From Magallana gigas (Eukaryota), in contig NC_088862.1 of assembly GCF_963853765.1 (NCBI RefSeq), positions 28,024,001-28,088,000 on the forward strand: a DNA stretch of 64,000 bases, given 5' to 3'. Shown here one piece after another: positions 2,514 through 63,121 of the stretch. The stretch's first letter is position 1; every line of letters starts with the position of its first letter. A model generated the notes under the pieces. The model saw only the letters and a program-made list of their open reading frames with translations. It was not told where the DNA came from and ran no database searches. Both the position numbers and the translations under genes were made by a program.

Positions 2514-3490
2514 TATATAAGATTTATTCTACACTGCATTTGGACTACCAGGCTACTACAACCGAGTTGGCCAATACATTCACTGAATTTAAAAGTAAGT
2601 ATTGTATTCGTTTTAAACTTTTTATAACTATTTTTTAGTTATGTTTTTATGTAATTCGTTCATATGTGTACTTAGTTTGGTAAGAACCAATTATAAAAAT
2701 CATTGATTTTTTTTCTTTTAATGTTAGTTTACGTCTTTACTCTTTATTCATGTATTTTAAATGTTACTCTCCAAGTATCCAAATTTATTATTTATAAAAC
2801 AAAATCTAAACAGCAAATGCTTAAACATTTCAACAGCTTGAAATGTACGTTGGCGCAGTAAAATATATTAACATAGCCCTTTACATATAAACAAAAGCAA
2901 TAGAAACATAAAAAACCTATGGTTCTAACTGAATTGATATGGAATTTATTATTTGGTATATAAAATTATGTATGAAACGAACGCTAAAAGGAAAAACATT
3001 AGCACATTCTCCCGTAGCTGTTTCTATTTCCATTGATTGTAGCATACAATGTACAAGTATCATTAACAATTGCTTTAATTTTATGCTTACATTGTATCAG
3101 GAGTTTGCGAATCAAAATTGTACTAATGCATTGCAAAGCGCCAACAAATGAATACCTTTTTTTAGAATTGCAACGAAACATATCAGAAGTATTCTATATC
3201 TGTTATTTGTCTTAAGGAACCCTTATATCTGTTTTGCTGCTTAAGCATGTTTTTTTCACCTTTTGTAAATTGCTTTAGTATTCCTTTTACAGTTACTACA
3301 AATGCCAGAATGAAAAATGGTACGAATAAGAGCTCAATGGGTGTTGTCCTAAACAAAAACGAATCTAAAAGGATTTTTTTCTTTTAAAGTTGCGCTTATC
3401 AGACTAACGGTCGTGTTTTTGTTCACATGGATGATATATATTTACATCAAAATGCTAGAAAAACGCCAAATAGACATAAAAAAAGATTAG
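2514..3490 (+). pseudogene. Gene A (3' part only): stalk exon 2514-2594 and TM exon 3293-3490, with a +1 frameshift before the TM
   Basis: Close paralog of gene D exons 22851-22931 and 23620-23816, with AG/GT sites intact. An extra T in the run at ~3374-3380 gives TAA at 3385-3387 before the hydrophobic segment. The ancestral TAG is at 3488-3490. Confidence 0.75.
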
Positions 3491-5244
3491 TCCTATTTAT
3501 TATACATAAAAGGTGTATATATATTATAGATTAAATGATTATTTTTTTTAAAAATCAGCTCCTTTTTTAATAAATCATCAATCAGATTCCTCTCAGGAGT
3601 AAGAAGCTAAAATAAATCTTTACTATGAACTTAATAGCTGTGTCTTTTTAAAAAAAATTGCCTCAATCATTTTCCAAAACCACTAATTTGACATAAATTT
3701 TGAAGGATATTTAGTCATGTTTGCTTTTTTATATTGATAAACAGGTACATGTAATGCATACATGTATACGTAAAATGTCATAATATGATATATTTTAACA
3801 ATATCATTGGCGTCAAAATGCGTCCCTTTAGGTGTTTTTATATAAGCAGATAGGTGAACGTCATTGCAATACGAATGAGTTCTTTAAAGAAAATGCATAG
3901 TATACTGTTTTTTTAGCATGTTTGTCAAAACCCCATAGAATTATATTTTACATGCATTTGGATTATGTACATTTTTTTTTACAGGAAAAGCTGTAATTTA
4001 TATTGCATGTTTTCTTCGTACAGACTCAACTACTAGAGATCTTACATGTTATGAATTAAGTAAAACATTCCATTTTTTTAGATGACCGAGTCAATTAGAA
4101 TTACATGTATATGTCTATTTCAATCAAGAACAGTTAATCTTTTATTGATTGTACCATTTGTAAACAAAGTAAAGTTGTTTACATGTAATATTGATTACAG
4201 ATATCCAACATCTAATATCACAGCATGGCACTGTATTTGATATTCATGTAAAATCTATGATGCATAATTAATTGTTTCCATAACTTTATTTATGTTAAAC
4301 CCCTTCTTTACTTTTCAAGGCAGCATTGACGCTTGTTTGTTTCCATTTGAATAAAAACAGTAACACCTCTTGATTGTTAAAATTTTGTCATTTATTTAAA
4401 AATGACGCAAAATTATAGAACATATAAACATAAACAAAAGCGGCTGGAAGATCCCCGAACATTTGACTAGAAAACAAATTGGAGAGTAAAAAACAATAGG
4501 GGACTCCCATCCGCAAAATTGCTAAAACTAGTTCACATGCTAAAAAACTACCATTAATGAAATACAATGGAAACAAAAGTGGTGCATTAAAAAAGGCCAT
4601 CAACCTGAAAGGTTGAAGCACCACTCAAAATGTTGCCTTGGTAAAATATTGAGTACCATTGTAAAAAGTTAATACAATACAGCACCAAAAAATATATAAG
4701 AGTAACAAAGCCAGACAGCCAATTGCTGAACCTGACATTCATGGAAAGCAATGCACGATGGAAAGCAAAATACAACAATGGCATACATCAAAAATGAAAG
4801 GAATATAAAATATATCGTTTCCTAGCCATCAGGAAAAATGATTAAAACATCAAGTTGTAATCAAATTATATATTTCTTAAAAATTGTGGAGTAGGCTTAC
4901 AACAAAGCACAGATATTATAACCTGAAATCTGATGCAGACAATTGCTGAACATGATATATAAACATAGATAATAAAAAAAAAACCAGCTGTATTGAACTG
5001 ATAGACACACAACTAAGGTAAAAACAAGTCAATACCGGTAGTTGGATTCAGACAATTGCTGGACATGATATGCAAACTTAGAAAAAAAAACCAGGAACTA
5101 CAATGGATTAAAAAATACATAATTGAGGTAAAGACAAGTCAAATACTTTGATGCAGACAAATGCTGAACATCAAAAACACAATACACAAACGGATTGGAC
5201 GGCAAGTCAGCAACCTAAATGAACACTGTAATAGGACAAGGAAA

Positions 5245-6202
5245 CTAACAAAGTAAGGAATTAATGCGAATATATTTTTGTACAGCATCTGCTTTCCACC
5301 TACCAAGTTTTTGAATTTCAATTTGTGAAAGTCCTCGCTTAGCTGCCTCAGTGGCTGCTCCTATTCGAAAACTGTGACCTTTGTACCATTGTGAATTAAG
5401 CCCTATAAACTTCACAGTGTTTTGAAGGTTAGTTGAAACAAATTGATAAGATACTGGGGAACCTGAATGAAATTGAAACAAGGGTCCATTACTGTGTTTG
5501 TGAGCGGACAAATATAGTTGGAGGGTTGTGACTGGGCAAACTTGTGGTGGGGAGACTTTAGAGAGAGATATGGTTATAGGGTGGGTATTATGCATGGTTT
5601 TTGAATGTCGCAATATTAATTTAACTGAAGAGTTTCCATTGAAACTAACATCTTTCCGTTGAATTATGCATGCATGATTTGATGATGTTTTAGCAATCAG
5701 TTCCCCCATGCGAAAAAACCCATGAAAAGCTACAAAAAAAAGACATTGAAGCAAGAGTCTATTGAAAAAAAATTGGAATAGTAAATTGCAGGGCATTGAC
5801 TAGTTTGACTAAAATTGAAGATGTGATCGGTAGTCTGTAATCAGGTGCTTTTGCCGACTTGTTCGCCCCAAAAATAATTTTTCTGACCAAAAATGATTGG
5901 GAATGGTCTTGTATGTTAAAAATTTTGTGAACATAGCTAATAGCTGACACCATGGAGGTAATCGAAGATGGGCTATAGTTTTGTTCGAAAAGATAAGCAA
6001 TAAAATTGCAAAGAGTAATTTCAGATATTGGTAATTTATTGCTTACATTTCCTTGTAAACAAAACTGTTGAAAAAGCATCCAGCTGCGCTTATATGAAGC
6101 CTTTGTTGACTCTGAAAGTGAGGAATGAAGCAAAGCTAGGGCTGTGGTACTCAAATGTGAAGTAGGTTGGCTGGAATTTGCACTGGTGTTTTGTTCAGCC
6201 AT
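5245..6202 (-). CDS. Tyrosine recombinase, split by a +1 frameshift at ~5765-5772
   Basis: N-terminal LSESTKASYKRSW region, then catalytic residues FRMGE (R), HSKT (K), HSFRIG (HxxR), GRW and KYIR (Y). Removing one T from the T8 run joins ORFs 5759-6202 and 5245-5796. Confidence 0.92.
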
Positions 6203-7904
6203 GGTGCAAGAGTTAGTGCTTCCTGAAATTCGAGGCGAGACAATCTGTCAGCTAACACATTGAATTTTCCAGGGACATGTTTTGCTTTGAAAAAAATGTT
6301 ATTTTGTAAACAAGAAATAACTTATCTCCTTACTAACTTCATGATTGTCTTGTCTTTACTTGAAGTTTTATTGATAATTGCCACCACTGCTTCATTGTCA
6401 GTGAGAAATAAAATTTTGTGGTTTTGAAATTGGGAACCCCACATCTCTAGAGCTAGCACAATCGGGAAAAGTTCCAAAACTGTGATGTGAAACTGTTTGA
6501 ATGGTTCTAACCATTCAGATGCAAACCAAGTTGAACCTAAAACGGCTGCATAACCTTTTGTAGATGCAGCATCCGTATGCAATGTAAGATGGTCAGAAGA
6601 GGACCATGTGTCATTCAGAAAAACAGACTTGCCATTAAAATGTGAAATGAACTGAAGCCAACATTGAATGTCTGCTCTGGCTTCACATGTGAGGAGTATG
6701 AAATGCCGAGGATTGGTAACTTTTACAGTCAGGTCAATTAACCTACGTAGAAAAGCCCTACCAGGTGCAATGACTACACATGCAAAATTGAGCAAACCAA
6801 TGAGAGATTGCAGGTCATGCAAAGTGACCTTTTTACGATGAGACATGTTTGCTAAATGGGTTTGAATTTTCAATACTTTATCATTTGGTAAACGACATTC
6901 CATTGCAATAGAGTCAACTTCAATACCATAAATGATAATATTTGTGGTTGGGAGACAAGTTTTATCTGGGTTCAAAGGGACTCCTATTCTGTCACAAAGA
7001 GTAATGAAATTGTTTAAATCTGAAAACAGCTTTTGGATGCAGGAGGGCCAATAAAGAAAAAGTCATCAATCATGTGAGACATGCCTTTGGCAAAAAATTT
7101 GTTGAGCATAATCCACTGTAAAGAACTGCTTAGTTTTTCAAAAATCTGACATGAGCTACTGGCACCCATAGGGAGACACTTGTCATAATAATACAAATTA
7201 TCCCACATAAAACCCAGTAAATGATAATCATCGGGGTGTATGGGAATATTCCTAAATCCATCCTGAATGTCACACTTTGCCATCAAAGCTCCACTACCAA
7301 ACTGTTTGACAAGGTTTATAACCGTGTCGATTGAGTCATAGGAGACCTGGCTGTTAACTGCAGGTATTTGAGAATTAACAGAGTTATTTTCAGGATAGGA
7401 TAAATCATGAATCAAACGAAATTGGCCTTGAGCTTTTTTAGGGACCACTCCCAGAGGGGAGATGACCAGATTAGGGTATTGGGGATTTGTAGATGCCTCG
7501 GATATTCTACCATAACTTTGTTCTTTCTTAATTTTGTTAAGAACAATTTCAGGATGTTTATTAGTTGACCCATGGTTTTTGGAAGGGGTTGAAGAAGGGG
7601 TATTAAGGCAGCCTAACTGAAAACCATAAGTAAAGCCTGAAATGAGGTAGTTTGCTAAGTCTTGATCATAACCCTCTAAGTATGCTTTAAGAATTTCTGG
7701 CTTTACTGGAGTGGGCATTTTTTGAGGGTAATCGTTCCTCATTTGAGGGGAGTTTGGGGCACTTGAACCGAGGGTGCTGCTCTTTACAGTACTGACAGGC
7801 ATGCTTGTAGGTGCATGGGTCAGATCTACATTCCTGTCCTTGATTGAATGAGTAGCAAAATTTTGCTTTGGAGGTTTGAAAGTTGTTGGATTTGGATTTT
7901 GCAA
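6151..7904 (-). CDS. Reverse transcriptase / RNase H ORF, with a frameshift at ~7022 and an in-frame TAA at 6322-6324
   Basis: SPLGVVPKK, FRLIHDLS, KCDIQDGFRNIP, LPMGASSS, HMIDDF (RT); IGVPLNPDK continues in another frame; TDAA, ELFPI, TDNEAV and, past the stop, HVPGKFNVLADRLSR (RNase H). Natural stop at 6151-6153 overlaps the YR start. Confidence 0.93.
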
Positions 7905-8814
7905 GAAAGGACTGGTTTGAGGGACGAAATTTAAAGGGTTGAAGATTTGCCATCATAACTAACTCCTGTAATGGCTCTTGCCAAGGCAAAGGGGCAGACT
8001 GTCGTAATTTACGAAACTCTTCATCATAATACCGCCAGGAGTCGGTCTTGGTGGTAAAACTCATGTCTCTGATCATGTAGATGTATTTAAAGAGATGAGC
8101 TGCATCAGAAGGTGTTTTCTGAATGAAGATGGTTGCATATATGAGAAATGCTGATGTCCATTGGTTAATGGAAATGGGAAATTTTTGAAATTTACCTTGT
8201 TGGAAATTAATTGCCCCTCTTTCAACTGACACAGAAAAATTGTCATCTTGTTGATTGGGGAGCAACAGCCGAATATCAAAATATGAGTTGTCCCAAATTT
8301 TTTGCTTAAGTTTAGCTGACACAGTGGCCCCCAGGGGAATATTGTTGGAGAAATTTAGGGGTTGGGGGTCATGGTTGGTTGCTGACTCACCTCCAAATAA
8401 AGTATTTAGCACTGCAGGGACTGATAGTGTGTCTGGCTCCACGGAGGGTTGAGGGCAGGGTTGTTGGTTAGGCTCCGATGATACCTGTAGTGACACAGTT
8501 TGACTTGCTGGGATGGTGTCATTTTGGCTTAACACTGCAGATGGGTGATTCTGTTCGCATGCATTTCCGCTTGGCACTACTGAGGATGTGCTGATTTGTT
8601 CAGTGACTGGTGGTGGCACATTGTGATGTACTATGGTTGATGGGTTTGGGTTGAATTGGTTTTGTTTCTTCAGGATCGCGTCGGCGAGCAGATCATAGTC
8701 AATTGTTAAACTTTGACTTTGACTTCCTTTCTTCTGTCGTTTAGAGGGTGGATCAATCTCAGGAGGTGGTGATGTTGTTGATAAAACAGGTCGTCTACTT
8801 CTTTTTGGAGGCAT
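7687..8814 (-). CDS. Gag-like ORF1 (375 aa) with a C-terminal Cys/His zinc-knuckle cluster
   Basis: Uninterrupted ORF with a basic N-terminus and a P/S/Q-rich linker. CYSFNQGQECRSDPCTYKHACQYCKEQHPRFKC is typical of YR-retroelement gag. Overlaps the RT ORF. Confidence 0.85.
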   Translation of the reverse strand: MPPKRSRRPVLSTTSPPPEIDPPSKRQKKGSQSQSLTIDYDLLADAILKKQNQFNPNPSTIVHHNVPPPVTEQISTSSVVPSGNACEQNHPSAVLSQNDTIPASQTVSLQVSSEPNQQPCPQPSVEPDTLSVPAVLNTLFGGESATNHDPQPLNFSNNIPLGATVSAKLKQKIWDNSYFDIRLLLPNQQDDNFSVSVERGAINFQQGKFQKFPISINQWTSAFLIYATIFIQKTPSDAAHLFKYIYMIRDMSFTTKTDSWRYYDEEFRKLRQSAPLPWQEPLQELVMMANLQPFKFRPSNQSFLAKSKSNNFQTSKAKFCYSFNQGQECRSDPCTYKHACQYCKEQHPRFKCPKLPSNEERLPSKNAHSSKARNS

Positions 8815-9538
8815 TGTCTAAGGAAAAAGAGAGTAACAATCAATAATTTAGAAGCGCTGTTAGTCTGCAGCAAGAAACAAACTGAGCTCATACCCAGAGA
8901 AATCTAGTATTTCAATGTAAAAAAAAAAAAAAAATAATAAAAATTTGGCAACAATTGATACTGCTTCAAGACAATGATAATAAGTAGAACAAATTTGTGC
9001 CTAAATGCAATGGCACTTTAGAGCTCAAACTCTGTGCAGATAAATAACCGAACACAAAAGTTCATAAGGGTTATGATAATTGATAGAAGAGCTCAAACTC
9101 TGTGCAAATAAACAAACTGAGCTCATACTCAGGAAATTTTGAGTTGTTTAGTTCAGTAAGCATGGGAAAACACAACCAATGTGTTCGGATTCGCATAAAT
9201 GAACAACTGAGCGCATACTCAGTAAATTATAGGAATCAAGCAGCAGACTTGAATTGCAAATAAACTTAATGTAATAAGAACAAATCAGGCACACACTTGC
9301 AATTTAAAGCACAAACTCATAATAATTGACCAAAGTCAGATTAAGGCAAATAGACCTTAATAAAGTGAAACAAGTGAAGTGATGTAAGTATTGAAAACTT
9401 AATGTTAACTTGTGGAGTAATGCGACAAAACATTACACATAAAATAAGTTAACAATTTACAAGAAAATTACATGCATTTTCTTTATAATATTCCAAGTAG
9501 ATAGCTGTTTGCTATAATTGTGAACTAAAAAACCCCAC

Positions 9539-10151
9539 CTAAAGGTATTGGGTAACATGCAGAAAAGCAGATTTAATGCTTTGTATATACTTTCTGGAGT
9601 ATTTCCCATTCATGTCTTCACGAATATGCACTCCGTCGGAAGACAGAAAATCAAGGGACGCCCAAAAAACCTCGGTGCTTCCAAAAGGAAATGTTATCAT
9701 GTAATGCACACGCCGAAGCGAGTTGAAGGTTCAGAGAAATCACCTCCGAGTTGAATGCTGCTGACACGCGTTGGGAATTGCGCCTGAGAATTTGTCCAAT
9801 CACTACATGTTGTACGTTACAACCGTGCAACAAATATTGCGCATACGAAAGGATTTCTTGCGCCTATTTGGGTATGTTAGGGGAGCTGCAGCACAGGTCA
9901 TTTCCTCCAATTTGAATGAACACAATGTTGGGTCGCGCAACAAAATAGGTAAACTCACGTAGTGCACAAAGTCTAGAAATTGTCAAACCTCCTCTTGCCA
10001 CACAAGTTACATAATATTGATCCCGATTTAAACGTAGATTGTTGTCCTCAGGACTATTGTTCATGAAATCTCTGAGGCGACGTATGAAGGAATGACCCAC
10101 CAAAGTTACACGCAGGGGGTCTCTACCATTCGCCCTCGGTGTTCCCGCCAT
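9539..10151 (-). CDS. SGNH/GDSL-type hydrolase ORF within the element (in-frame TAG at 9864-9866, +1 frameshift at ~9664-9669)
   Basis: VTLVGHS (block I Ser), RGGLT (block II Gly), IQIGGNDL (block III Asn). Reads through TAG to QHVVIGQILRR...FWKHRGF; removing one T gives WASLDFLSSDGVHI (block V DxxH), ending at TAG 9539-9541. Confidence 0.88.
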
Positions 10152-12626
10152 CTTGGTAAAAGACGTAAACACACGCCTAGATGTTGGAACGAGTAAAAGA
10201 GTCAAAAATACTGACCTGAAAGTCCCGAAAGACGAATGAATACTGTATCCAGATAGATAGTATCTAAGTATAACTCAAATTCCACCCATGCACAAGCATG
10301 AAAATAAAATTAAAGCTCTGTCTTGAACGATCAAAAATATCGGTGCAGCTTCCCCTAGCATAAACAAAGAATGTAAAAATAGCCCCAGAGAGTGCGGCTT
10401 TCTGATTGGCTGATCGGTCATAGAATTTGCATACGGTAATAGAAAACCTTACGACCGGATAAAAACGGTGATGTACAACAAACAACTACGCAAGTCCTTA
10501 AAAAATGTTACACAAGTATAAATAACATGGTATGTAATTAAAAACAATAAGATATAACAATTAATAAATCAAGGATTAACATAAATTGCTTTATTTACAA
10601 AATAAACCCTATTTATACGTCAATATCTTTTATAATTATCCTCGTGCGAAAACTACTAACCATATATTATCTGATCATCAGACTTCGAAACTAACAAACC
10701 AAGACGGAAGTTCTACTAGCAGAAGAAAGAACTGATTTCGAAAAACTTAGATATAAATTATCAAAACTTTATCATGTCCTTTTTTTGAATATGATGCGAG
10801 TTTCTGTGTATCAATTGACATTTAACACGGCGAAAAGGCCTTTTAAGGAAAATATGTTCAAAGGTAGTGAGAAGGAATCTGACGTTATAATATTATAATT
10901 GATTATAATAAGAGAATGCTAAATCCGTACTAAAATTGTGAAAGTCACATTTGCCTTTAGAGAATCTGTAATGCTCTTTTTAATGACATTAAAAGATAAT
11001 CGATATCAATGTATGTATCTATGTAATTGAAATTTAATTTCTTTTTTTTTTAATAAACAATGATAGGGTGGTTTTTAGTATTTGACTTTACCATTGAAAT
11101 AGTTATAAACTGTGGTTATACACTGTGATGGCATCGTCCATAATGCATGGAGAAAGCAAAACAATTGAAATTGATGCATTCACAAATTAAAACACCAGAT
11201 ACCAAATTCAAAATGGAAGGTGCTTTTATGTTTTGATGAAACACCATTTATATATAAAGCATTATTTTTTTTAAGTTTATCCGTTTTAAGTATATGTTTG
11301 AATCCCTCCTGGATAAACTTTATGAAATAATAAAATACTTATCACATCACTAATTAAAAAAATAAGTCCAGTTTATAAATTTATCCTGTCCGTTTGAGTC
11401 AGTGATTGAGTTTGAATTTTGTATCTGGTGTAATGTTAATGCATCAATTTCAATTATTGTGGGTACTCCAAAATTCAAAATCAATCACTGACTGAAACGG
11501 ACAGGATAAACTCTACAAATAATGATTAATATTTAAATGGTGTTCCGTCAAAATATTGATACACTCATTTAGTTTCTGTTTCCTGTAATTTCCATGTTTA
11601 TTAGAATAAAGGTTATAAAATATACAGGTACAAGGTGGTCTTAGCAGAATTATTTTGCGGAAGACAGTGAAAGCATTTTTTAAAAAATTGATACTTTTTT
11701 TAAAAATCGGCCAAAAAAGAAATTTTTGACAAAATGTGTCATCCGTAACATTCGTTTCGTGCGAAATTTTTTGTGGCGTCAGCAAATCCGCAAGCTACAT
11801 TAACTTTTGGACTATAGCGTATCATACCTTCGGGGTTTGACGCAGACCATCGGATGTTGGCGCGACCATCACACTTTGGAGTCTTAGATATGTTTTAACA
11901 TTCGATTATGCAAATGAATTATTTGGCTATCACTGATCACTAAGTTTTTCCTCATATGGTGGAATTTTGGCGATACATACCACGTGATACTAAACTAGTT
12001 GTGTCCGATTTGGTTTCATTTTTATATACATATTCCCCATTGTACTCAAGCCCACATGTCCTTTTGTTTTTTTATTTATCAAAGGGGAAAGGTCCTAAAC
12101 CAAAACAAAATACGCAATTAAGTCAATAGAATCGTCGATTATTCGTCATTAATTACAAAATAAAACACAATGGAAGTTCACTCCATTAATCAGAATCTGT
12201 AAAAAAAAAAAACAACTCTTATACAGTAACTATCAACATGTTATATATTTTTTTAAAGATTCATTGATTAAAAGAGCAGTGACATTTTTTATATATTACA
12301 TGTATTATACAGAGTTACATTTTACTGCATGATACTTTTGAACTGTTTTGTCATTTATTTCATATAAATAAAGTTATTTCATGAATGAAGTTCCAAGGAT
12401 ATCGATCAAATAGTTCCGCAACGGGATTCATGGTAAAAGTCGGATTGTATAAACATGCGTTTTCAATTAACTATTAATTTTCATAAACGTTTCGCCACTA
12501 TTTGCAATGTTTCTATTCGATCGGATAATTTATTGAACACGGAACAATTAAAACGGACAAAAATACATTCTGAAAGTTCCAGACTTGAGTTTGAGTGTCT
12601 TTTAAAAACGCATACGTTTGAATACC

Positions 12627-15130
12627 ATGAAAAAAATAGTGACTGGATGCGTTGTTTTTATGATACTGTTTGGGTCTTTTCAAGCCAGACTTACGAAGAC
12701 TTGTGATGGGTAAGTAAACTATGAAGCATAACATTTCTGGTTTTGCTAATTTTTGTCTGTTATCATAATTATAGAAAAACTTTTCTTGTAGAATTAACGG
12801 AACATCATGTTGCATGGGGTTCAAGTGGGATCTTACAGAAAAAAAAATGTTTACGTAAATATAAGAACTAAACTATTTAATCGTGTAAATGGCATATCAA
12901 ATATGTTTCTTTTCATGTGCTAATATTTTATTCAAGCATTACAAAAGGTTGAATGTTTCAATTTAAAATACCAACTATGGGCATTAAATGAACTTTCAAC
13001 ATTATTAACAAAATTAAATGTATAAAGATTTCCGGGCATTAAATTTTATAAGAACTATCGCTTATAAGGTAACACTTAAATCACTTTAGTTTCTGTTAAT
13101 AAACAATAGTGTACACATGTATAATATCTAAGGTACTTAGTAAAGCTCCATCTTATAGGTTAGTTGATAGAACGCATCAAACTGAAAACATCATATTCAT
13201 TATTCAATACTTATATCTTTAGCTTGTGCCAAGGGGTATTGGGGATTAAGTTGTGAAAGCAAGTGCCCATTTCCTTCTTATGGGTTTAGATGTCAGTCAC
13301 ATTGTACCTGTATTGACAAAGACTGTGATCCTGCCAATGGCTGTAGACATTTGTCACGAGGTACATATGCTTCAAACTACAGCATATCAAGTATGCAATT
13401 TGCGTCTTTTATACAATTTCATGTAAAATGTTGTAGACATCACTTCTTCAGGGGATCCGAACACTTCTTTAATAGGCTTGGACTACAAGATTGTTACAAC
13501 AGAAGTTTTGAATCCCAAAGTCCAAACCTCTGAACGTAAATATGATTTCAATCAAACGTCCATGAGAACAAGTATTTCTCTACTAACATATCCTTGTAGA
13601 TTATACTCATATTTGAGAGAATTTCGGAAATTTTCCAGATGTACTATCAAGTTACAACAACATTTTAATAGTAAATTCTAAAAATACTTATGTCTAGACT
13701 TACATAAAAAAAACTAGTTTAAGCGTAGAAATATTTTGGTACGTTACATGAATGTCATTTTGGAATAGCTCTTTTGGAAAATGCAGTTTAATGTTGGTAA
13801 AAATTCGAAATACACCATTTTAAAAGAAAAAAAAATATGATGAAATAAATAGCTTTATCTCTGTTATCTTTCAAAACCGCGGCGCAATATTTTTTTGTAA
13901 ACTTGGCAGATGACAGAATAAGTATTAGTAACATATATTGTGCTGTATTTTGTTTACCTATCGATATCAATAAAACATTTCGGTCATTGTTGTGTACAAA
14001 ACAATATGTATTTAGCGTGTAAAAAGGGATATAATGGAACAAACTGCAGGCAAAAATGTCCCTTTCCTTCGTACGGACTTGGCTGTCAGAGAAAATGCAA
14101 CTGTATTGACAAAGTATGTGACCATATCAACGGATGTGTGCACCAAACTAGATATACATTTGTTATCAAAGATAATATTTTTTTTAATCATTTCAAACTT
14201 AAATGACTAAGAATCAAGCAAAATCCGTTTGTAGAAGATTGTATTTATAAATTTTAAAGATAGAATATAAAAATGATTCTGAATTTAATAATCAAACACA
14301 AAAAAATCCGTTTTTTAAAATTAATTTTGTCTTTTTATACTGTTTGCTTAGTTTTGAAATCAATTATGGGATCGGAATTAATGATTTGCATGATTTTTGA
14401 TTTAAATGTATGATAATAATATCCAATTAATGATTGAGTTAAGAGGAGAAACGAGTATCACTTTTTTTTTAAACGATAAAACAAAGTTGTACAAGCAACA
14501 TTTTACCTCAGGTTTTCTAAAACTAAGTCACGATGTGACAGTTACCAATATATTTTGAAAATAATCAATATTGTGTGGAACTATTTTTATAGGATATAAT
14601 TTTTAAAGACATTGCTTTGTTTCTTTTTCACACTTTACATCTTTTACTGACAAAAAACAAATATTAGGTTTATTACTTTTAAAATAATCACTTATTTATG
14701 TTGAGTTAATTAATCAAACCAGGATTGTTTAACAAGAGAAAATATAATTTAAGTTTTATTTATTGTTTTTCTTTCTATACTACCCCAGTCCTTCCATGAG
14801 CCTTAAACGCCAGATCGTAACAGCTTACATTTTCAAGTCTGAAGTCAATACCTTTGAAAGTAAAAATGTATTTTAGCTAAAATAAGACTTATTTAATTGA
14901 TGGATGGATGGATGGATGGATAATTCATAAAAAGGAAGTATTTCATATAAAAGAAATTAAATAACAATCAACTTATATTCACAGATAGCAAATCATATAT
15001 TGATAAAACAACTACCTGTACGACGTCGAATCAACCTGCTGAACCGAATAAATCTCTTATGTTTGCACTCATCGGACTATTTATTGTTGCTTTGATCATA
15101 TTCTTATTTATTCTCATGCTTGACTTATAG
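12627..15130 (+). pseudogene. Gene B: two-EGF receptor paralog, disrupted
   Basis: Exons 12627-12709, 12792-12854 (63 nt vs normal 62; A9 run), 13223-13360, 13452-13535, 14016-14171 (donor GT>AT), 14779-14859 (acceptor AG>AT), 14985-15130. Direct duplicate of gene E. Confidence 0.8.
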
Positions 15131-15773: not shown

Positions 15774-18700
15774 ATGGAAAATATAGTGACCTTTAGTATT
15801 GCATATATCACACTGTCTGAGTCTTTTCAAACTATGCCTGAAGGAATTTGTGAAGGGTAAGTAAAACTGTATCGCTTGAACTGTCGATAATTGAGAGGAT
15901 TGCCTTTATTCTACAATAATAAACTGTAACCACTGTTATTGCAGAATAAATGGAACTTCATGTTGTTTCGGATTCAAGTGGGACCTTGCACAAAAGAAGT
16001 GTATAGGTAAATATACGACATTCAAAACTTTCCCATCTAAAATAATGCTTTTTGGTGCAAATAATTTATAAACACAAATCTAATCAAAAGGTTGAATGTT
16101 ACAATTTGAGAGGCGAAAACTGAAAATACTTATACATATTTTTGAATAGATATTCGACTTTCTCAGACTCTTTATCATGAAATAAAAGGTAAAAATTCTT
16201 AAAAAGGTTAAAAAAGGGTGAAAATACGAGTAGCTCAAGTATATCGTTAATTAACTTGTTTATACTGTAACTAACTTCACTTTTTGTTGACTAGCCCGAT
16301 TGAATAATGATAATACTGATAATAGAAAAATGTGGCCCAACCGTATAATTACATGTGATATGGCTACATGTAATACGCCACAAATCGAATCATTTTTCAT
16401 TATTTTTTGTCAAGCATGTGGCAAGGGACATACGGGGTTTAACTGTGAAATAAAGTGCCCATATCCATTGTATGGAGAAGACTGTCAAATGAGATGTGAC
16501 TGTATTGACGAAGTCTGTGATCCTGTCAATGGATGTAATCAATGGCTGTCAACAGGTATCGATATGATTTTAATTTCATTATATCTAATATGCCAATTTT
16601 AGCTATTTACAAACACACAGCTGTATGTTAAGTTTTGTATACATCACTTATTTCAGAGTATCCAACGACTCATTTAAAAGAATTCGACTACAAGATGGTT
16701 ACAACAAAACTATTGGAATCTAAAGTCAGCATTTCTGAAAGTAAATTAATTTTTAGATCAAATCAATGTAATTAAAAGAATGTGTATGCAGTAATTAGTA
16801 TTTGCTCTTTACAAAAACATCTGGCAGAAAAATACGCTTTCATTCATATAAAAGAGCCAGCAGGTTTAGATATAAAGTATTTCCGCTTAAAATGTTCAAT
16901 TATAATTTAGAATGACTTTTTTGTGTATACATGTATTATATGTTTGTGAAATGCTCAGTGCGGAAATGTTAAATTATTAAGACTTTGAACACGAATCGAC
17001 TAAAACTTCCTAGAAACTCTCAAATACTTTCAATTGGCCCCTTTCACAACAGAACAGTGCAATCTAATTATTTGAATCACATGTGGGTACGGTAACAGTT
17101 ATTTACTGTAATATTTTGCTCTGTTTAAAAGTGATGTTTAAAATCTTTACAAAAAATAAAATTTACAATTTATTTCAACAAGAATACCTATTAATTAAGA
17201 ATCTATTAATAATTATCTGTTTAGACTTTCTCAAGGGTATTTGTGACGTCATAAACAGTGCATTTTTTCGTACTTTTCTCAAAATCTAAACTGAGTAGAA
17301 GACACAAAATGTTCAGTGTCATTGTGAATAGAAAACGATGACCGCAGCCGTCGCCCACTATGAAACATATTATCACTTTATCATGTCATTTTACAAAAAA
17401 GTATTTTTGTTTCGTAGTAGGCAACAGTTTCGAACACTTCCCCTTCATAAAAATATGAGAAAATATGCCATTATTTATCATTTTTGACTACATCTTAGAA
17501 AAATTTCAAAATTTTAAATTCAATTTTTTGTGTGTGTAAAATATGATAAAAGTGCTGAACTTGGCACTTTGTATGATCGTTTTTCATATATTATGTGTGA
17601 CTTTTCATCAGATTTAATGAACTTTTTAAAGGGCAAATATTGAAAGACACTTCACCTTCTTTTAGATATTTTACATCATGATTTTTAAACAAACAATAAA
17701 CTATTACTTCGTAAACACAGTTTGATCTCTGAGCATATATATGAAGACTCAAACCATACTTAAGGAAGGAGTCTTCTCGTCATTAAACATACTTTTTTAT
17801 AATAAGATATTCATGAAATTTTGACACAGTCAAACGGATCATATTACAAAATGATTCTATCAGTTTATTCAAATTTGACCTTTTTGTTTTTGCATAAAGG
17901 TCAGGTCAAAGTCATTACATTTTTCCTCAACGTAAAAGATGATAAAAAAAAATGTAGCTCTTTGTAGTTCTGTAGACATCTATTTAAGATTTGAAGATTC
18001 TATTCTTCAATGAAATGAAAGAACATCAGAATGTCATAATGTCATCAGATTATACTACTAAATTGGAATAAATAGTTATGCTAAAATTGATATTGCTTAG
18101 CCCGCATTTCTTCTAGTTTTCTTAAATTTTGAAGTTTTGATTATTTTTTATGAATCCAATAATAAAATATTTCTGATTTTTATGTATTATGAAGACTTTA
18201 TATAAAGATATAAATTGACAGAAAAACTGGTATATTGACCATCACAAAAATCAATGTATAGAATAGGATCTATAAAACACTTTAAAAAGGTAATTTGATA
18301 GGCAAATTATATTTTAAAAACATATATTTAAACCCAAGTACCTATTATTAGTTCACATTGGTAAAAAAATCAAACATTAATGTTATTGTTTTTAAAATGC
18401 TAAAACAGACTCATTAATTGCAGCAATCCTCAATTGCAAAACATGTGATATTTTCCTTCGCCAATATTACGCCGGCCAAAAATATAGTCCTTGTTAGATT
18501 CTTAAAATTGATTAGTTTCTCTATGCCAAGTTGTATGATAATAAATAAGAAAGAAAAATATACTTTTTTTCATTTTCTTTGATATTCATTTAATGAACAA
18601 TTAATCAAATTTACGTTTGACAAGTCGAAAACCAGAAAAGACTTCTTTCTTAAAAAAACAAACAGAAGCACGGCGTCCAAGTTAAGACAGCAACTAGTGG

Positions 18701-19285
18701 CGTCTGCTTAAAAAATGAATAAAACTGCAACACAGTTATGGAAACATGCGAATTATTTATGCAAACATGCGGCAGATAAGTTAACATGTGACTCATATCT
18801 TCCATCATACAAGATGGTTTTGTTGACATGAAAACTTCTTTTAAATCATATGGGCATTATCATTTGTAATATGAATCATACTGAAATAGATAATTTACCT
18901 GTCAATACTGTTATTTTGCATGTTGACAAAAAGGTTGCTTGTTAATAAAATTATAATGCATTTTGACATAACTTTATCATATTTAACTCACATGTAGATA
19001 TAAAGAAGTCAAAGTCAACACGAATATGTTACAAGAATAATGTCCGGTTATTACGATATATTCATCAGGAAAATTTGTATCATATTAATAACATTTATAG
19101 TTTTCTGACATGTGGACAATTATCTTGGATATCGATGTTGACATGACTTTTTGCTTATTGTATATATTTCTCTAACGTTAGGTTGGTCACTAAAACCGTC
19201 ATTGCAGTTTTGTATTTTATGTTTAATAGACCGCTTAACTTCAAAAGATCTCCAAACAGAGAAAAACATACAAAGCAAACATACG

Positions 19286-19323
<38 letters not shown>

Positions 19324-19572
19324 AACCCATTTTAATTTATAAATGATTAATTAAAAATGACTTAAATTATATCTTTATTTGCAGACTATCCTGATAACAC
19401 ACCACACAATGACGGAACAACAACATGTAAGACTTCGAACCAAGAACGTGAAAAGATTAATTTTCTTACATTTGCACTCATTGGACTTTTAATTGTTGCT
19501 TTTATAATAATTGTTGCCTACTTTTACACGCGGTTGTTAGTAAAACGTTTTAAAGTAACTAGGATTGTATAA
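15774..19572 (+). CDS. Gene C: small EGF-like single-pass membrane protein (MEGF10/Draper-like module)
   Basis: Exons 15774-15856, 15945-16006 (INGTSCCFGFKWDLAQKKCI), 16415-16555 (8-Cys EGF), 16657-16740, 19385-19572 (TM FALIGLLIVAFIIIVAYFY). All GT-AG and in frame. Confidence 0.85.
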
Positions 19573-32530: not shown

Positions 32531-32533
<3 letters not shown>

Positions 32534-32594: not shown

Positions 32595-32598
<4 letters not shown>

Positions 32599-53758: not shown

Positions 53759-55511
53759 ATGAAAACAATCAATGTTGTAGTTATGTTGCATTGTGTGTTC
53801 ATGTATGAGTATGCATGCCTGGACCTGTGTAAAGGGTAGGTTAATTTGTACATTGTGTTACTAACGCAATTTCTTTTAATTTTTCAATTAAGTTTTACAA
53901 ATGTTGATTCTATAAATAGAGAAATGTACGAATATTGTAGAATAAATGGAACACTGTGTTGTTCTGGATACAAGTGGGACCAGGATCAAGCAATGTGTAC
54001 ACGTATGTTATACTACCATTTATACAGATTAATACCAATATATAAAACACATTATTAAATGAAATTGTTTTATAGTTACTTCTATCTTATACAATGTTCC
54101 TTAGGTTGTAACATAGGATATGTTGGAATAAACTGTGCCATAAGATGCCCTTTCCCTTATTATGGATTGGACTGCCAGTCAAAATGTAATTGTTTGGAGA
54201 AAATCTGTGATAATGTCAACGGATGTACACATTCAACAAAAGGTAGATGTGTATGTTTTATGTATGACTGATTGTACCAATCCAAATATATGTTAATTTA
54301 TCTTCTGACTGGGATTTTATAAACATACATAATTTCAAAATGTTACATTTCTAGGAAACATGCAATGAATGGAAACCAATAACGTTCAATTTTTTTTCGA
54401 TTTAGAGGTTTTGAAATCAAGATCATAATACATGTACCAAACAAGGTGTGTGTTTCTGTGCCAATTTTGGACTGGTTAATGAAAAAAAGGACAAAAACAC
54501 ATTTTATAATCTTTTCATTAATATTATATGGACAATTTCATAACACAGACATGATTGTTTTATTCAATACACCAATACATTGTTATCTATATCTTTCTTA
54601 CTGTTTTCATTTTTTTCCCCTAGAACATCCACCTTCTTCGTCTAGATACAGGGAGTTCAACTTCATAGCTATCATAACAACACAATATACCATTGGCAAT
54701 CATAAAAGTAAATTGAAATCCCTCTAACATCTAATGTAATCTTTATCTTGTATTGATATTGTTTTCTTCATATTTTGTTATTATTTTAGACGAAAGGGTT
54801 GGACTAACGTCTTAATAACAAAACAAACCTTTATCATAATATCAAAATCTTAATTGCAATCATAAAACGTATTTAGATAAACAAACATATGTTCGATAAA
54901 ATTAACACTTACTGATTAATAGTTTGTTTTTTTTTATTTGCAAAATTTGAAATAAAAAGGATTAAAAAAAGCACAGGAAAATAATCTCAAAATGTGTACA
55001 AGTTATACTTGAACAGATGTATATATAAACGTCTGATTTCACAGATTAAAATAAAAACAAGCATATTGTAAAAAAAGTTCTTTTTGAAAAAAAAAGAGTC
55101 CGGACGTAGCAGGTATGTTAACTTCTGTTCCCTTTATCTAGTAAGTATTTCTTATCAAAATATCCAACGACAATCAGAATTTTGTGTTTCGCATAAGATA
55201 CTATTACATAATTTTGGCCCATACTTTAGCATATTGTTAAACATGTTTTCTTGATTTGTATAACATTAAATGTTTAACATCAAATATACTGATGTAAGAT
55301 TTATTTTACAGAGAGTTTCAACGTAACCGTAGTTAAAGGCGGTGCAAAAGATTTACAGATGGATCTCAAAACCACGGAGACAGCACCTTATGAAGCAAAT
55401 AGTTTAATTTATCCAATAGTCGGACTTTCAGTGACAGCTGTTATAATAACTGTATTATACATATACACATGGAGAGTAGAGAAGCGTAGATTACACACTT
55501 ACTCAGTTTAA
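53759..55511 (+). CDS. Gene J: small EGF-like single-pass membrane protein (G-type)
   Basis: Exons 53759-53835, 53941-54002 (INGTLCCSGYKWDQDQAMCT), 54105-54242, 54624-54707, 55312-55511 (TM; tail VEKRRLHTYSV*). Confidence 0.86.
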
Positions 55512-57478: not shown

Positions 57479-58580
57479 ATGGAAACTTTATTGACGTTGT
57501 GCATTGCAACAGTGACAGTTCTGGGACTATTTGGAAATAACTCGACAAACAACTGTGATAGGTAGAAGTTATTAATTAAAACAAAAAATTCACGAAAACA
57601 TTTATAATATGTATATTTGTATATAATGTTGACTGTGTCATTATTGTAGCATAAATGGAACCAGATGTTGCTCTGGGTACATGTGGGATTCCTTGAAAGA
57701 ACAGTGCATAAGTAAGTGCCAATGCAATATGCATGTGATAATAATAAGTATCTTTAGTTATATATTACCATTTTATTCTATTCAAACACACACTTAATGA
57801 ACTTCTACGGGTTTTTTTCAGATTGTAAAGAAGGATATACAGGAATACACTGTTCAATTGCATGTCCTTTACCTTCATATGGACTGAACTGTCAGTCGAC
57901 ATGTAGTTGTACTGATGAAGACTGTAATTATGTCACCGGATGTAAATATCATGCTGGAGGTATCTATTAAAATGTTTTCATTGACAATCTTTTCATCTCA
58001 TTTGGTAATGTTTTCTTCCCAGAACAAATTTCTCTTTGTTCAATATCTTCAAAATGTTATTAACCTAATTATTGTTAGTGTACATTAACCTCGGCTCATT
58101 TGCTTAAAAAACAAACATATCATATTTTGACAATTTGAGTATGATATCATCATGATTATTTTGCACAGTCCGTGGTTGTTTTAGGTTGGTGTAGGCTTTG
58201 ACCAATCAATAAACAGGACGAGTAGATTTTAGATCTATCAAGGTTTTACTTTTTTTCATTACTATGAATTACAATAAGTTTCCGTAAGAAATAGAAGGGA
58301 TCACACTTGGACTTTAACAGCAGTTTGCTACTTATATCATACTTGCATTTGGGGTGAAAATATACCAAAACGTTGATGAATGGGATTACATTTTATGATG
58401 TATGGGACCTTCATACATCAATGCTGTAAAATTGTTCCCAGTCGTTAAAGGCCGAAGCCAACATTTCTGTCTAAAAGTCCAACAAATGTTATCTTCGTAC
58501 CCAGTTAATAATTGTAAAAAAGGATGGATATCGCTATTGATGTTACAACCCTTATTGTACTATGTAACTTTTCAGAACAC

Positions 58581-58673
<93 letters not shown>

Positions 58674-60037
58674 GTGTTACGAAAAAAATGAAGTCATTAA
58701 ACATTTATTAAGAGCGTGAAATTAAACTAAAGGACTATGTGGGGTATGGTCAAATATCTGCCCCCAATTTTAACCAATATCTAAATAGTATCGTTCTAAG
58801 ATCAAATCGTCATAAATAATTGTACAGTGGACGCCTATCTTTAATCTTGATTTAGTCATCATTGCTCATTCGCTGTTTTTCTATGACGTCACCCAAATGA
58901 CCTAATTCCCGCAAATTTTCAAACAAATGAAAATTTTCTCATTTTTGCTTTATATTTTGCATTCAGATATATAGAGCGCAGATCTGCTCAAGTACGATTT
59001 TAACATATGTTTATCTCCAGATAAATATACACCTTATGCTAAAAACCGGTACTTGAGCAAGTCGGAAAACCATCGGAAAACACCCACTTTTTGCTACAAA
59101 ACATCAATTTATCAAAATAAGGCATCTTCATGACGTCATTTCTACATTATGACGTCAGTGTTGTGATAACCTTTTACACCCTTATTTTCAATATGATTTC
59201 AACTATCTTCCTCCTTGTTTTTAAAGCTCGTTATGAAACTTTAATATTGGGGGGCAAAAAATGCATGATACCGCACATAGTCCTTTGTAATTTAAATAAT
59301 GACTCTACTATAAAATACGTAAACGTACTAGACACTCAATCTGAAATAAAGATTACAAAGAATATTTTCGTAAAATTCCACGCATTATTCGATGTGAAAT
59401 AAATCACGTACACAAAGAAATTAGCAGAAATGTTAGAAGAAAATATTCAATTTTTACAATACATTTTCATCATGTATGAAATCATGTTTTATTGATCGCA
59501 AATAATATACAGGTACCAGTTTTGATAGTTAAATGTAAAATACACTTTAACTTCTTACATTTTTATAGTTACGATTGAAAGGAAAAAGAGATCATCATTT
59601 TGCAAAGTTTCGTAAGTTAACTTAACAATACAATTGTCTAAAACAACACATGCTGCTTTTCTTTAATTCCAAACACTGTGACAAATAAAGTATGAAAGAG
59701 ACGCAAATAATGTAATGTAATGCTGGATTGTAATTTATTGAACCAGTCATGTTCTTTATAAAACAATGTCTATACAATATATGTAATGATAACAAAACCT
59801 AAATACAATTTTCCTTTCATTTTTGTAGATTTGTTATATCATACAACAGACAAATCATCAAGATTCAACAAATCAGTCTCCAATATTCCAAACATTACTC
59901 CAAAACGTGAACCATCTGCCAACAATCGTTTCTTTTTATTTTCAATGATTGTAGTTATTGCAGTGCTAATCATCATATTTGTTATTTTCCTTAACACTCA
60001 GCTATTTGAAAAGCGACGAGTTGTCGCTAATTTGTGA
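57479..60037 (+). CDS. Gene K: small EGF-like single-pass membrane protein
   Basis: Exons 57479-57561, 57650-57711 (INGTRCCSGYMWDSLKEQCI), 57822-57959, 59829-60037 (TM FLFSMIVVIAVLIIIFVIFL). Confidence 0.85.
58585..58668. repeat. (AG)n microsatellite (a shorter one lies at ~19287-19323)
   Basis: Direct read. Confidence 0.95.
58731..59284. mobile_element. MITE with AG...CT termini (Kolobok-like)
   Basis: TIR aggactatgtggggtat / ataccgcacatagtcct; the TTAA-like flanks are degenerate (ctaa / ttgt). Confidence 0.6.
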
Positions 60038-62244: not shown

Positions 62245-62383
62245 NNNNNNNNNNNNNNNNNNNNNNNNNNNNNNNNNNNNNNNNNNNNNNNNNNNNNNNN
62301 NNNNNNNNNNNNNNNNNNNNNNNNNNNNNNNNNNNNNNNNNNNNNNNNNNNNNNNNNNNNNNNNNNNNNNNNNNNNNNNNNNN
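62245..62383. other. Assembly gap (N run)
   Basis: Direct read. Confidence 1.
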
Positions 62384-62634
62384 TTTAAACGGGGAAATGT
62401 AGTTTGGTTTCAAATATTAAAAATTGAAGGAAAAACCTAAAATATCAATAGTAATGAATCAAAATGTTTAAAAGGCATTTAATGGGTATTATGTTTTCCT
62501 TATCACGATACTTTATATTTTATAAACAACTGTACTCAATTATATGTATTAAGTTAAATAATATAAACATTTTTAATTTCATTCAAAATAAGAACAAGTC
62601 GTGTATTGTCTTTGCCATCGTTTGCGTTGAAATA

Positions 62635-63121
62635 ATGACAAAACATTTGCTTTGCTTTGTTTTGCTGGTTCAGATTTCTCTCTTTCAGTCTGAAATTTGT
62701 CTTGGGTAAGATTTTTCTTTGTTATTGTAATTGTCTTTTATAATTAAACGGATTTTTTTACTTATACGTTCAATATTAAAGTGAATCCGGAAAACATTGC
62801 TGTGTTGGATTTAGATGGAACGATACACAAAAGATATGTTTACGTAAGTATAATAATTTTTCTTTTTTTTTCTTCTTTAAATTATATTTGTTTTGGTTAA
62901 AAGTTATATTTAACGAATGAGTGTTTCATTCATTCGTTACTATTACAATGATGTTTTAACTAAACATTTTATTACATCACCAGCATGTGTTAGCGGATAT
63001 TATGGAATTAACTGTAGCTCGGATTGCATATTTCCTCTGTATGGAATGAACTGTATGTCAAACCGTAACTGCTCTGAGAACGACTGTGATCGTGTGTACG
63101 ATTGTTTAAAGTCTAATGAAG
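62635..63121 (+). CDS. Gene L (5' part; H-type paralog); TM exon not seen in the window
   Basis: Exons 62635-62705, 62782-62843 (CCVGFRWNDTQKICL), 62984-63121 (EGF with one Cys>Arg, MSNRNC). Confidence 0.78.

What the first reader, a model, noticed from the sequence alone, without database searches (positions are those of the whole stretch)
2514..63121. Dense tandem array of 12 miniature, diversified Draper/CED-1/MEGF10-like receptor genes
Seen: about one gene per 5 kb, all on +, with near-fixed exon lengths (62-65 nt CCxG exon, 138-141 nt EGF exon). Cys spacing is invariant while residues between the Cys vary strongly between paralogs. Predicted products are only ~155-245 aa. Established: Draper/CED-1/MEGF10/Nimrod receptors have a CCxG[YW] motif followed by many EGF repeats and act in recognition and phagocytosis. 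Inference: this is a minimal one-module version expanded as a variable surface-receptor repertoire (immune or self/non-self recognition) under birth-and-death evolution. Short exons make it easy for annotation to miss.
Basis: partly seen in the sequence, partly recalled or inferred. Interest (0 to 1): 0.82.

Follow-up and report, generated by a model that had tools for sequence, protein, structure and literature searches.

The report
Oyster array of tiny EGF membrane-protein genes
This stretch of Pacific oyster chromosome holds twelve tandem copies, about a third of them broken, of a small gene for a membrane-anchored protein with one EGF-type module; the genes are real and partly annotated already, but they lack what makes Draper/MEGF10 a signalling receptor.

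Summary
All on the + strand, the window carries 12 units built from a signal-peptide exon, a 62-65 nt CCxG[YF] exon, a 138-156 nt eight-Cys EGF exon and a stalk+TM exon. Cys spacing is invariant. RNA contigs from three studies show the predicted GT..AG joints. The G6 model (187 aa) is identical to RefSeq XP_065929875, "uncharacterized protein", of Magallana gigas, so annotation did not miss it. Relatives are auto-named MEGF11.

- The EGF unit is of the Tie2/SCARF1/MEGF type.
- Pfam finds no EMI or EGF domain.
- Each gene has 1-2 EGF units, and the cytoplasmic tail is 2-16 aa without NPxY or YxxL.
- In neighbouring genes the CCxG+EGF exon pair repeats 2-3 times, so it is a module, not an N-terminal EMI remnant.
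- Birth-and-death evolution is supported: a segmental duplication, a retrotransposon insertion, four broken copies and three with changed invariant residues.
- Diversifying selection is not supported. dN/dS is 0.03 at scaffold columns and 0.54 at variable columns.

The window is the core of about 40 such genes on C10 27.5-28.2 Mb. Function is unknown; a surface binding module that needs a partner is my best guess. Interest is modest.

The parts
2299..4288 (+). G0: 3' fragment of a gene copy (intron after the EGF exon, stalk/TM exon remnant at 3293-3487 with a frameshift, 3' region). Exons 1-3 are absent. Pseudogene.
   Evidence: 84% nt identity to 22647-24615 of G3. The TM exon is split over two frames.
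12627..15130 (+). G1: exon 1 12627-12709, CCxG exon 12792-12854 (63 nt, one extra A in an A-run, frameshift), EGF exons 13223-13360 and 14016-14153 (second has no in-phase donor), TM exon 14985-15130. Probably a pseudogene.
   Evidence: stop at codon 60 of the spliced model
15774..19572 (+). G2: exon 1 15774-15856, CCxG exon 15945-16006, EGF exon 16415-16555 (141 nt), stalk/TM exon 19385-19572. The minimal model has an intact 157-aa frame.
21887..23816 (+). G3: exon 1 21887-21957, CCxG exon 22333-22394 (acceptor is GG instead of AG), EGF exon 22491-22628, TM exon 23620-23816. The frame is open (155 aa) only if the defective acceptor is used.
26772..29648 (+). G4: exon 1 26772-26854, CCxG exon 26937-26998 (CCNRF: the invariant Gly is Arg), EGF exons 27707-27844 and 28482-28637, TM exon 29503-29648 with a stop two residues after the TM segment. 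194 aa.
   Evidence: It is the duplicate of G1 at 86-87% nt identity.
35464..37071 (+). G5: weak CCxG remnant 35464-35514, EGF exon remnant 35591-35723 split over two frames with the second Cys lost, TM exon 36875-37071. Pseudogene.
38773..40899 (+). G6: exons 38773-38855, 38968-39029, 39146-39283, 39465-39545 (27-aa stalk exon), 40700-40899. 187 aa. The 3' UTR probably runs to about 42550.
   Evidence: GT..AG joints in RNA contigs. The spliced model is identical to P0103 = XP_065929875/8/9.
42955..44965 (+). G7: exons 42955-43025, 43117-43178, 43311-43448, 44778-44965. 152 aa.
   Evidence: Joint 43178>43311 in two runs; one contig differs at 3 of 199 letters. Model.
47559..49480 (+). G8: exons 47559-47632, 47718-47782 (65 nt; CCQAY, the invariant Gly is Ala), 47989-48126, 49284-49480. 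157 aa.
53759..55511 (+). G9: exons 53759-53835, 53941-54002, 54105-54242, 55312-55511. 158 aa. Closest paralog of G6 in the window.
57479..60034 (+). G10: exons 57479-57561, 57650-57711, 57822-57959, and a TM exon from 59829 to the stop near 60034. 163 aa.
   Evidence: A C. angulata counterpart is called as a 166-aa product.
62635..63121 (+). G11: exons 62635-62705, 62782-62843, 62984-63121 (the EGF exon lacks one Cys, C27R, and has G39D). The rest lies at or beyond the window end.
4289..10580 (-). Retrotransposon insertion (reverse transcriptase, RNase H, tyrosine recombinase; the reading frames are fragmented). It is present in copy 1 of the duplicated block and absent from copy 2. It marks turnover in the array and is not part of the gene family.

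Best explanation
The window is the core of a lineage-specific tandem array on one chromosome of the Pacific oyster (Magallana/Crassostrea gigas). About 40 genes share this stalk/TM exon between 27.5 and 28.2 Mb.

Shown: each gene encodes a 150-195-aa type I membrane protein. From N to C it has a signal peptide ending in a Cys, one two-exon module, an S/T- and N-x-S/T-rich stalk, one TM helix, and a cytoplasmic tail of only 2-16 residues. The module is a CCxG[YF]xW exon, often preceded by an NGT sequon, followed by an eight-Cys EGF exon of the Tie2/SCARF1/MEGF type. G1 and G4 have a second EGF exon.

Shown: the array grows and decays by segmental duplication, exon-module duplication (all module exons are phase 1-1), transposon insertion and pseudogenisation.

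Inferred: because the tail has no NPxY/YxxL or other recognisable signalling motif, these proteins cannot signal as Draper/CED-1/MEGF10 do. Most likely they display a small glycosylated, disulfide-knotted binding module at the cell surface. They would act either as the ligand-binding partner of another signalling protein or as a ligand or tag read by other cells. What they bind is unknown.
For: Gene structure.

Spliced RNA: joints 38855>38968 (3 runs), 39029>39146 (2 runs), 39283>39465 (1 run) and 43178>43311 (2 runs), all GT..AG.

Identity and species: the G6 model is 100% identical to XP_065929875.1 on a contig of 37,310,742 bp, the same length as the window's contig.

EGF type: profile hits to PDB 6u11_A (1e-10), Tie2 EGF3 (1.6e-7) and SCARF1 (1e-4). 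The nearest Atlas clusters are mollusc 'MEGF10' of 161 aa and EGF_laminin/EGF_PEAR1L families.

Short tails: the stop falls 7-9 codons after a conserved KR in most copies, and there is no conserved donor there. Full-length database relatives end at the same place.

Constraint: dN/dS is 0.03 at the 13 scaffold columns.

Array size: 44 stalk/TM-exon hits, 40 of them on C10 27.47-28.23 Mb. The first look found 1992 EGF-exon candidates genome-wide.

Turnover.
Against: - There is no experimental or tissue-level expression information.
- The signal peptide and TM helix are judged from hydrophobicity only.
- The RNA contigs over the G6 EGF exon carry the letters of a sibling copy or allele (for example 39182 T>C, which is V61A of P0006). 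They show how this gene type is spliced, not that the window's own G6 is transcribed.
- A sampled polyA RNA run (about 1 in 100 of its reads) gave no reads on the exons.
- AlphaFold models were poor (pLDDT 46 and 63), so the fold rests on sequence matches.
- A third of the copies are broken, so some 'intact' ones may also be decaying.
Confidence: 0.65

Rival explanations
1. One reading: miniature Draper/CED-1/MEGF10-type phagocytic or immune recognition receptors, forming a variable repertoire kept diverse by positive selection.
For: - The EGF unit is of the SREC/MEGF type and relatives are auto-named MEGF11.
- Inter-Cys residues vary a lot.
- 'MEGF10 family' transcripts respond in oyster infection studies (PMC9892467), though those are not shown to be these genes.
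Against: - The tail of 2-16 aa has no NPxY/YxxL.
- There is no Pfam EMI hit.
- There are only 1-2 EGF units per gene.
- dN/dS at the variable columns is 0.54, not above 1.
- Recent copies differ mainly in the stalk/TM exons.
Confidence: 0.15
2. Membrane-anchored precursors that are cleaved in the stalk to release a soluble EGF-like factor, in the manner of pro-TGF-alpha or Spitz.
For: The layout is the same: signal peptide, one EGF-type module, short stalk, TM helix and a short tail. Many tails end in T-x-V or x-T-V, which recalls the C-terminal valines of pro-TGF-alpha (from my own knowledge).
Against: - The EGF unit has eight Cys of the Tie2/SCARF1 type plus a four-Cys CCxG part, not the six-Cys pattern of EGF-receptor ligands.
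- No cleavage site is recognisable.
- Neighbouring genes carry 2-3 modules.
Confidence: 0.1
3. A largely decaying array: most copies are non-functional leftovers of recent duplication, and the transcripts are noise.
For: Four of 12 units are broken and three more have changes at otherwise invariant residues. RNA depth is low. dN/dS is 0.4-0.5 overall.
Against: - Scaffold columns are under strong constraint (dN/dS 0.03).
- Splice sites, phases and exon lengths are kept between paralogs that are only 40-60% identical in protein sequence and whose introns no longer align, apart from the recent G1/G4 copies and weakly G7/G11.
- Reading frames are intact in G2, G6, G7, G9 and G10.
Confidence: 0.08
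4. The exons belong to one long multi-EGF gene of true MEGF10 type, and the 'genes' are artefacts of reading.
For: RefSeq groups G6 and a copy about 29 kb downstream as isoforms of one gene. Isoform X2 joins G6 exons 1-4 to the downstream copy's TM exon.
Against: - Every unit has its own ATG/signal exon and its own TM exon with a stop.
- No joint in the 6 kb laid links G6 to G7.
- RefSeq products are 171-224 aa.
Confidence: 0.02

Closest known systems
[quoted passage not shown]
   Same: These are the same genes or direct paralogs. XP_065929875.1 equals the G6 model residue for residue.
   Different: Nothing differs in sequence. The names are automatic, and I found no paper on the family.
Draper / CED-1 / MEGF10 / MEGF11 / PEAR1 engulfment receptors
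   Same: Type I membrane proteins. A CCxG[YW] motif precedes EGF repeats of the same C-x2-G-x2-G-x2-C-x3-C... type (plus my own knowledge of the family).
   Different: - 1-2 EGF units instead of about 15 or more.
- No Pfam EMI hit.
- The CCxG part repeats with every EGF unit in neighbouring genes.
- The tail of 2-16 aa lacks NPxY and YxxL.
SCARF1/SREC-I and the Tie2 EGF domains (PDB 8hn0, 2gy5)
   Same: The EGF exon profile matches Tie2 EGF3 (E 1.6e-7) and a SCARF1 EGF (E 1e-4) over 41 of 45 positions.
   Different: Those are large receptors with several EGF units and long cytoplasmic domains (a kinase in Tie2).
Drosophila Nimrod gene cluster
   Same: A tandem cluster of genes for CCxGY-motif proteins with Cys-rich repeats (from my own knowledge).
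   Different: The repeat here does not follow the NIM consensus (CxPxCxxxCxNGxC...), as seen in the A4 consensus. Here the CCxG motif is part of the repeating module.
Pro-TGF-alpha / Spitz-type membrane-anchored EGF ligands
   Same: Size and layout: one EGF-type module, a stalk, a TM helix and a short tail that often ends in valine.
   Different: The Cys pattern differs (8+4 Cys, not 6). No evidence of shedding or of a receptor.

Membership tests
Draper/CED-1/MEGF10-11 | N-terminal EMI domain | tested here: not met
   Pfam scan of P0103 (= G6) and seven full-length relatives at E up to 1 gave no EMI hit. Only a CCxG[YF]xW motif is present, and it recurs inside multi-module neighbours.
Draper/CED-1/MEGF10-11 | Long series of atypical/laminin-type EGF repeats | tested here: not met
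   One EGF exon per gene, two in G1 and G4. Neighbouring genes have 2-3.
Draper/CED-1/MEGF10-11 | EGF repeat of the MEGF/SREC/Tie sequence type | tested here: met
   Profile A1 against PDB sequences: Tie2 1.6e-7, SCARF1 1e-4, 6u11_A 1e-10. The Atlas neighbours are mollusc 'MEGF10' and EGF_PEAR1L clusters. Pfam EGF models themselves do not reach threshold.
Draper/CED-1/MEGF10-11 | Cytoplasmic NPxY and YxxL (ITAM-like) signalling motifs | tested here: not met
   Tails are 2-16 residues long, for example CQLEKRKMFTSTV. Neither motif is present.
Draper/CED-1/MEGF10-11 | Role in engulfment of cells or microbes | not testable with these tools
   No functional data exist. The literature only lists 'MEGF10' transcripts among responsive genes.
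Nimrod (NIM-repeat) proteins | CCxGY motif followed by NIM repeats (consensus recalled from memory) | tested here: not met
   The CCxG[YF] motif is present. The repeat consensus CxxGYxGxNCxxKCxFPxYGxxCQSxCNCxxxDCDxVxGC is not the NIM pattern.
Oyster small 'MEGF11-like / uncharacterized' membrane proteins (RefSeq) | Same exon set and protein sequence | tested here: met
   G6 is 100% identical to XP_065929875.1. The stalk/TM-exon profile finds 171-224-aa oyster proteins named MEGF11.
EGF-receptor ligand precursors (TGF-alpha/Spitz) | Six-Cys EGF domain | tested here: not met
   The EGF exon has eight Cys at fixed spacing, and exons 1-2 add four more.

The most novel reading that the evidence does not exclude
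Tandem copies may be combined at the RNA level. RefSeq isoform X2 (P0102) joins exons 1-4 of G6 to the stalk/TM exon of a sibling copy about 29 kb downstream, across five other genes. RNA contigs also show skipping of the phase-symmetric EGF and stalk exons (39029>40700). If such joints are real, the array could produce mix-and-match ectodomain/anchor combinations. That would be a small-scale analogue of clustered-protocadherin-type diversity in a mollusc.
Probability: 0.08. Interest if true: 0.65.

Novelty: new variant of a known kind. Interest (0 to 1): 0.35.

Why it matters
Oyster transcriptome papers routinely list 'MEGF10/11' genes as immune-responsive and read them as phagocytic receptors. 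This work shows that at least this subfamily of about 40 genes lacks the signalling tail, the EMI domain and the long EGF array that justify that reading. The automatic name is therefore misleading.

The family is a clean example of module-level (two-exon) and gene-level birth and death. It may be a surface recognition set, but no function is shown. Its value is mainly corrective, and a lead for binding studies.

Tried and rejected
- Pfam on single exons and on full-length relatives gave nothing above threshold.
- The search for homologous proteins with a stop-free genomic frame returned only unspliced Logan frames. With P0103 and with alignment A3 it returned only Magallana proteins and unnamed Logan contigs, so the range beyond Crassostrea/Magallana could not be settled.
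- AlphaFold gave pLDDT 46 for the whole protein and 63 for the EGF exon. Foldseek against the PDB found no match. I draw no structural conclusion.
- The look-up of encoding contigs had no record for P0103.
- Tiling the whole array failed.
- A tree-based count of changes needed ancestral states, which the machine does not offer. I did not attempt them another way and used ten independent nearest pairs instead.
- A bacterial promoter scan near gap 1 was irrelevant for this genome.
- Literature searches for the family, for the gene's locus name and for PDB 6u11 found nothing specific.
- The reading 'one long gene' was rejected (see rivals).
Full report
**What is in the sequence**

The window is AT-rich (28-36% G+C) and has two N runs, at 53306-53453 and 62245-62383. 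Translating all six frames, CCxG[YWF] occurs eight times on + and never on -. Cys-rich open stretches with the pattern C..G[YF].G..C...C........C...C.C....C.....C occur 12 times, again only on +.

The motif sits in a short exon with a clean acceptor (tattgtAG) and donor (GTAAGT/GTATGT). This exon is 62 nt in most genes, 63 nt in G1 and 65 nt in G8.

The EGF exon starts two bases before the first Cys. The first-to-last-Cys distance is 117 nt in all twelve. It ends five codons plus one base after the last Cys, giving 138 nt in ten cases, 141 nt in G2 and 156 nt in G4b. Both kinds of exon are phase-symmetric.

About 100-130 nt upstream of each CCxG exon lies an ATG exon that encodes a hydrophobic leader ending in a Cys, with a GTAAGT-type donor in the right phase. 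Downstream lies an exon encoding an S/T/N-rich stretch, a 23-residue hydrophobic segment around a conserved IGL, then Y.YT..LEKR and a stop 7-9 codons later.

HMMs made from these exons find 11, 12 and 11 copies in the window, all on +.

**The gaps**

Gap 1 lies 306 nt upstream of the G9 start codon. Gap 2 lies 252 nt upstream of the G11 start codon. No modelled exon crosses either gap.

For gap 2, both flanks align collinearly to a Crassostrea angulata locus (L021), with about 100 nt between them. For gap 1 I had no comparator. I read no letters into either gap.

**Gene by gene (and the calls cited)**

- Intact and canonical: G2 (157 aa), G6 (187 aa), G7 (152 aa), G9 (158 aa) and G10 (163 aa).
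- Open frame but changed at an otherwise invariant residue:
  - G4: CCNRF, and a stop two residues after the TM segment.
  - G8: CCQAY.
  - G11: C27R and G39D, and cut by the window end.
- Broken:
  - G0: only the 3' part, with a frameshift in the TM exon.
  - G1: an extra A in an A-run of the CCxG exon, and a lost donor in the second EGF exon.
  - G3: the acceptor of the CCxG exon is GG.
  - G5: the EGF exon is split over two frames and the second Cys is lost.

The blocks 2299-4288 plus 10630-15353 and 22647-29877 are duplicates at 84-87% nt identity. The first copy carries a 6.3-kb insertion that encodes reverse transcriptase, RNase H and a tyrosine recombinase on the - strand. G7 and G11 are an older pair, 67% identical through their introns.

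**RNA**

One 10-kb stretch was used to find runs, and 6 kb (38700-44699) was laid on three contig sets and one raw polyA run.

GT..AG joints appear exactly at the predicted borders:
- 38855>38968 in three runs.
- 39029>39146 in two runs.
- 43178>43311 in two runs.
- 39283>39465 in one run. This revealed an extra 81-nt stalk exon at 39465-39545.

A joint 39029>40700, seen in two runs, skips the EGF and stalk exons. No joint links G6 to G7.

Caveats:
- The contigs over the G6 EGF exon carry letters of a sibling copy or allele (for example 39182 T>C).
- Two of the joints carry an unexplained extra 'AT' after exon 2, which would break the frame.
- The sampled raw reads gave nothing on the exons.

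For G7, one contig matches at 196 of 199 letters, while the sibling copy in L021 is only about 85% alike. G7 itself, or an allele of it, is therefore transcribed.

**Identity**

A profile of the stalk/TM exon (A2), run against 1.84 billion representative proteins, gave 99 hits. Among them were full-length proteins of 135-224 aa with the match at their C-terminus.

One cluster holds XP_065929875/8/9 of Magallana gigas. That sequence is identical to my G6 model, and it lies on a contig of 37,310,742 bp, which is the length of the window's contig C10. The organism is therefore the Pacific oyster, and G6 is already in RefSeq as an 'uncharacterized protein'. [quoted passage not shown]

RefSeq treats G6 and a copy about 29 kb downstream as isoforms of one gene. 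Isoform X2 is G6 exons 1-4 plus the downstream copy's TM exon.

**Family and array**

In the oyster's own genome the EGF-exon profile has 1992 first-look candidates. All 150 that were scored are significant. They lie mostly on C10 27.44-28.23 Mb, with further clusters on C10, C9, C3 and C2.

The stalk/TM profile is much more restricted: 44 hits, 40 of them on C10 27.47-28.23 Mb. The window therefore holds a quarter of one subfamily.

In ten-kb tiles of the neighbouring part of the array, the CCxG exon and the EGF exon recur together two or three times within a gene. The pair is thus a roughly 67-residue module. It is not an N-terminal EMI remnant followed by an EGF.

**What kind of domain**

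Pfam gives nothing above threshold for exons or for full-length proteins. The EGF-exon profile matches PDB 6u11_A (1e-10), Tie2 EGF3 (1.6e-7) and SCARF1 (1e-4). The Atlas neighbours are mollusc 'MEGF10' (161 aa) and EGF_laminin/EGF_PEAR1L clusters. Structure prediction was too weak to use.

**Selection**

Among the 12 EGF exons in the window, median dN is 0.42 and median dS is about 1.0.

In ten independent nearest pairs drawn from 34 EGF exons, dN/dS is:
- 0.40 overall.
- 0.03 at the 13 scaffold columns.
- 0.54 at the other 32 columns.

G6 against its C. angulata-type sibling gives dN/dS of 0.42 over 187 codons. Of the 18 replacements, 15 fall in the stalk and stalk/TM exons, 2 in the EGF exon and none in the CCxG exon.

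This is a constrained scaffold with relaxed loops. It is neither demonstrated diversifying selection nor uniform purifying selection.

**Mechanism**

Shown: a small single-pass membrane-protein architecture with a 12-Cys ectodomain module and a very short tail, evolving by birth and death.

Inferred:
- Surface display with N-glycosylation. An NGT sequon lies directly before the CC in six window genes, and the stalk carries many sequons.
- Binding through the EGF module.
- Dependence on a partner for any signal, since NPxY/YxxL are absent.

Many tails end in T-x-V or x-T-V. That could serve export or PDZ binding, but this is speculation.

**Known or new**

The genes are annotated, so they are not new as sequences. 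I found no paper on the family. Oyster papers treat 'MEGF10' as a responsive family without looking at architecture. An earlier first-reader note of this scan (s1-380958) describes a similar array of miniature EGF receptors elsewhere in the same genome; I did not test it.

I file the finding as a new variant of a known kind: a MEGF/SREC-type EGF module in a minimal, tail-less, modular format. Interest is modest.

Noticed in passing
window 803-1983: Satellite-like tandem repeat with a period of 166-169 bp, about 7 copies at 71-80% match. It lies directly upstream of the truncated G0 copy.
   Followed up: partly
window 4289-10580 (- strand): Retrotransposon with reverse transcriptase, RNase H and a tyrosine recombinase (DIRS-like make-up). 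Its reading frames are fragmented. It is inserted in one copy of the duplicated block only.
   Followed up: partly
window 39700-40100 and 43500-43900: Intronic stretches with very high depth in all RNA contig sets (500-2900, against 5-17 on the exons) and many loose ends. These are presumably high-copy transcribed repeats.
   Followed up: no
window 39029/39146 and 39029/40700: Some RNA contigs carry two extra letters, 'AT', between the end of the CCxG exon and the next exon (X2 into the EGF exon; X1 and X5 into the TM exon). This would shift the frame. The cause is unknown; it could be a variant allele or paralog with a 64-nt exon.
   Followed up: partly
window 39029 > 40700: A joint in two runs skips the EGF and stalk exons. 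Without the extra 'AT' it would stay in frame and give a protein with only the CCxG part.
   Followed up: no
P0102 (XP_065929876.1) versus window G6: RefSeq isoform X2 equals G6 exons 1-4 joined to the TM exon of a sibling copy about 29 kb downstream (outside the window, near C10:28093740). It is either real inter-copy splicing or a mapping artefact between 90%-identical paralogs.
   Followed up: partly
L002, L006, L009, L017, L018, L020 (C10 27.45-27.82 Mb): Genes of the same array carry two or three tandem [CCxG exon + EGF exon] modules. Some are near-identical between loci (L009, L017, L018), which points to recent block duplications.
   Followed up: partly
L021 (C. angulata CM046784.1:29755457-29779169): The gene order there is G10-like, G11-like, G6-like, G7-like, G8-like, so the array has a higher-order repeat. 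Only two of the five units are called as genes in that record (166 and 187 aa).
   Followed up: partly
P0003 and P0045 (fish 'protocadherin alpha-C2-like' proteins): The stalk/TM profile matched these proteins in 9 and 3 separate stretches (TM plus juxtamembrane part of the profile). This is probably composition or TM similarity in concatenated cluster models, not kinship.
   Followed up: no
window 32799-33026: A 112-bp unit repeated twice at 94% identity, between G4 and G5.
   Followed up: no
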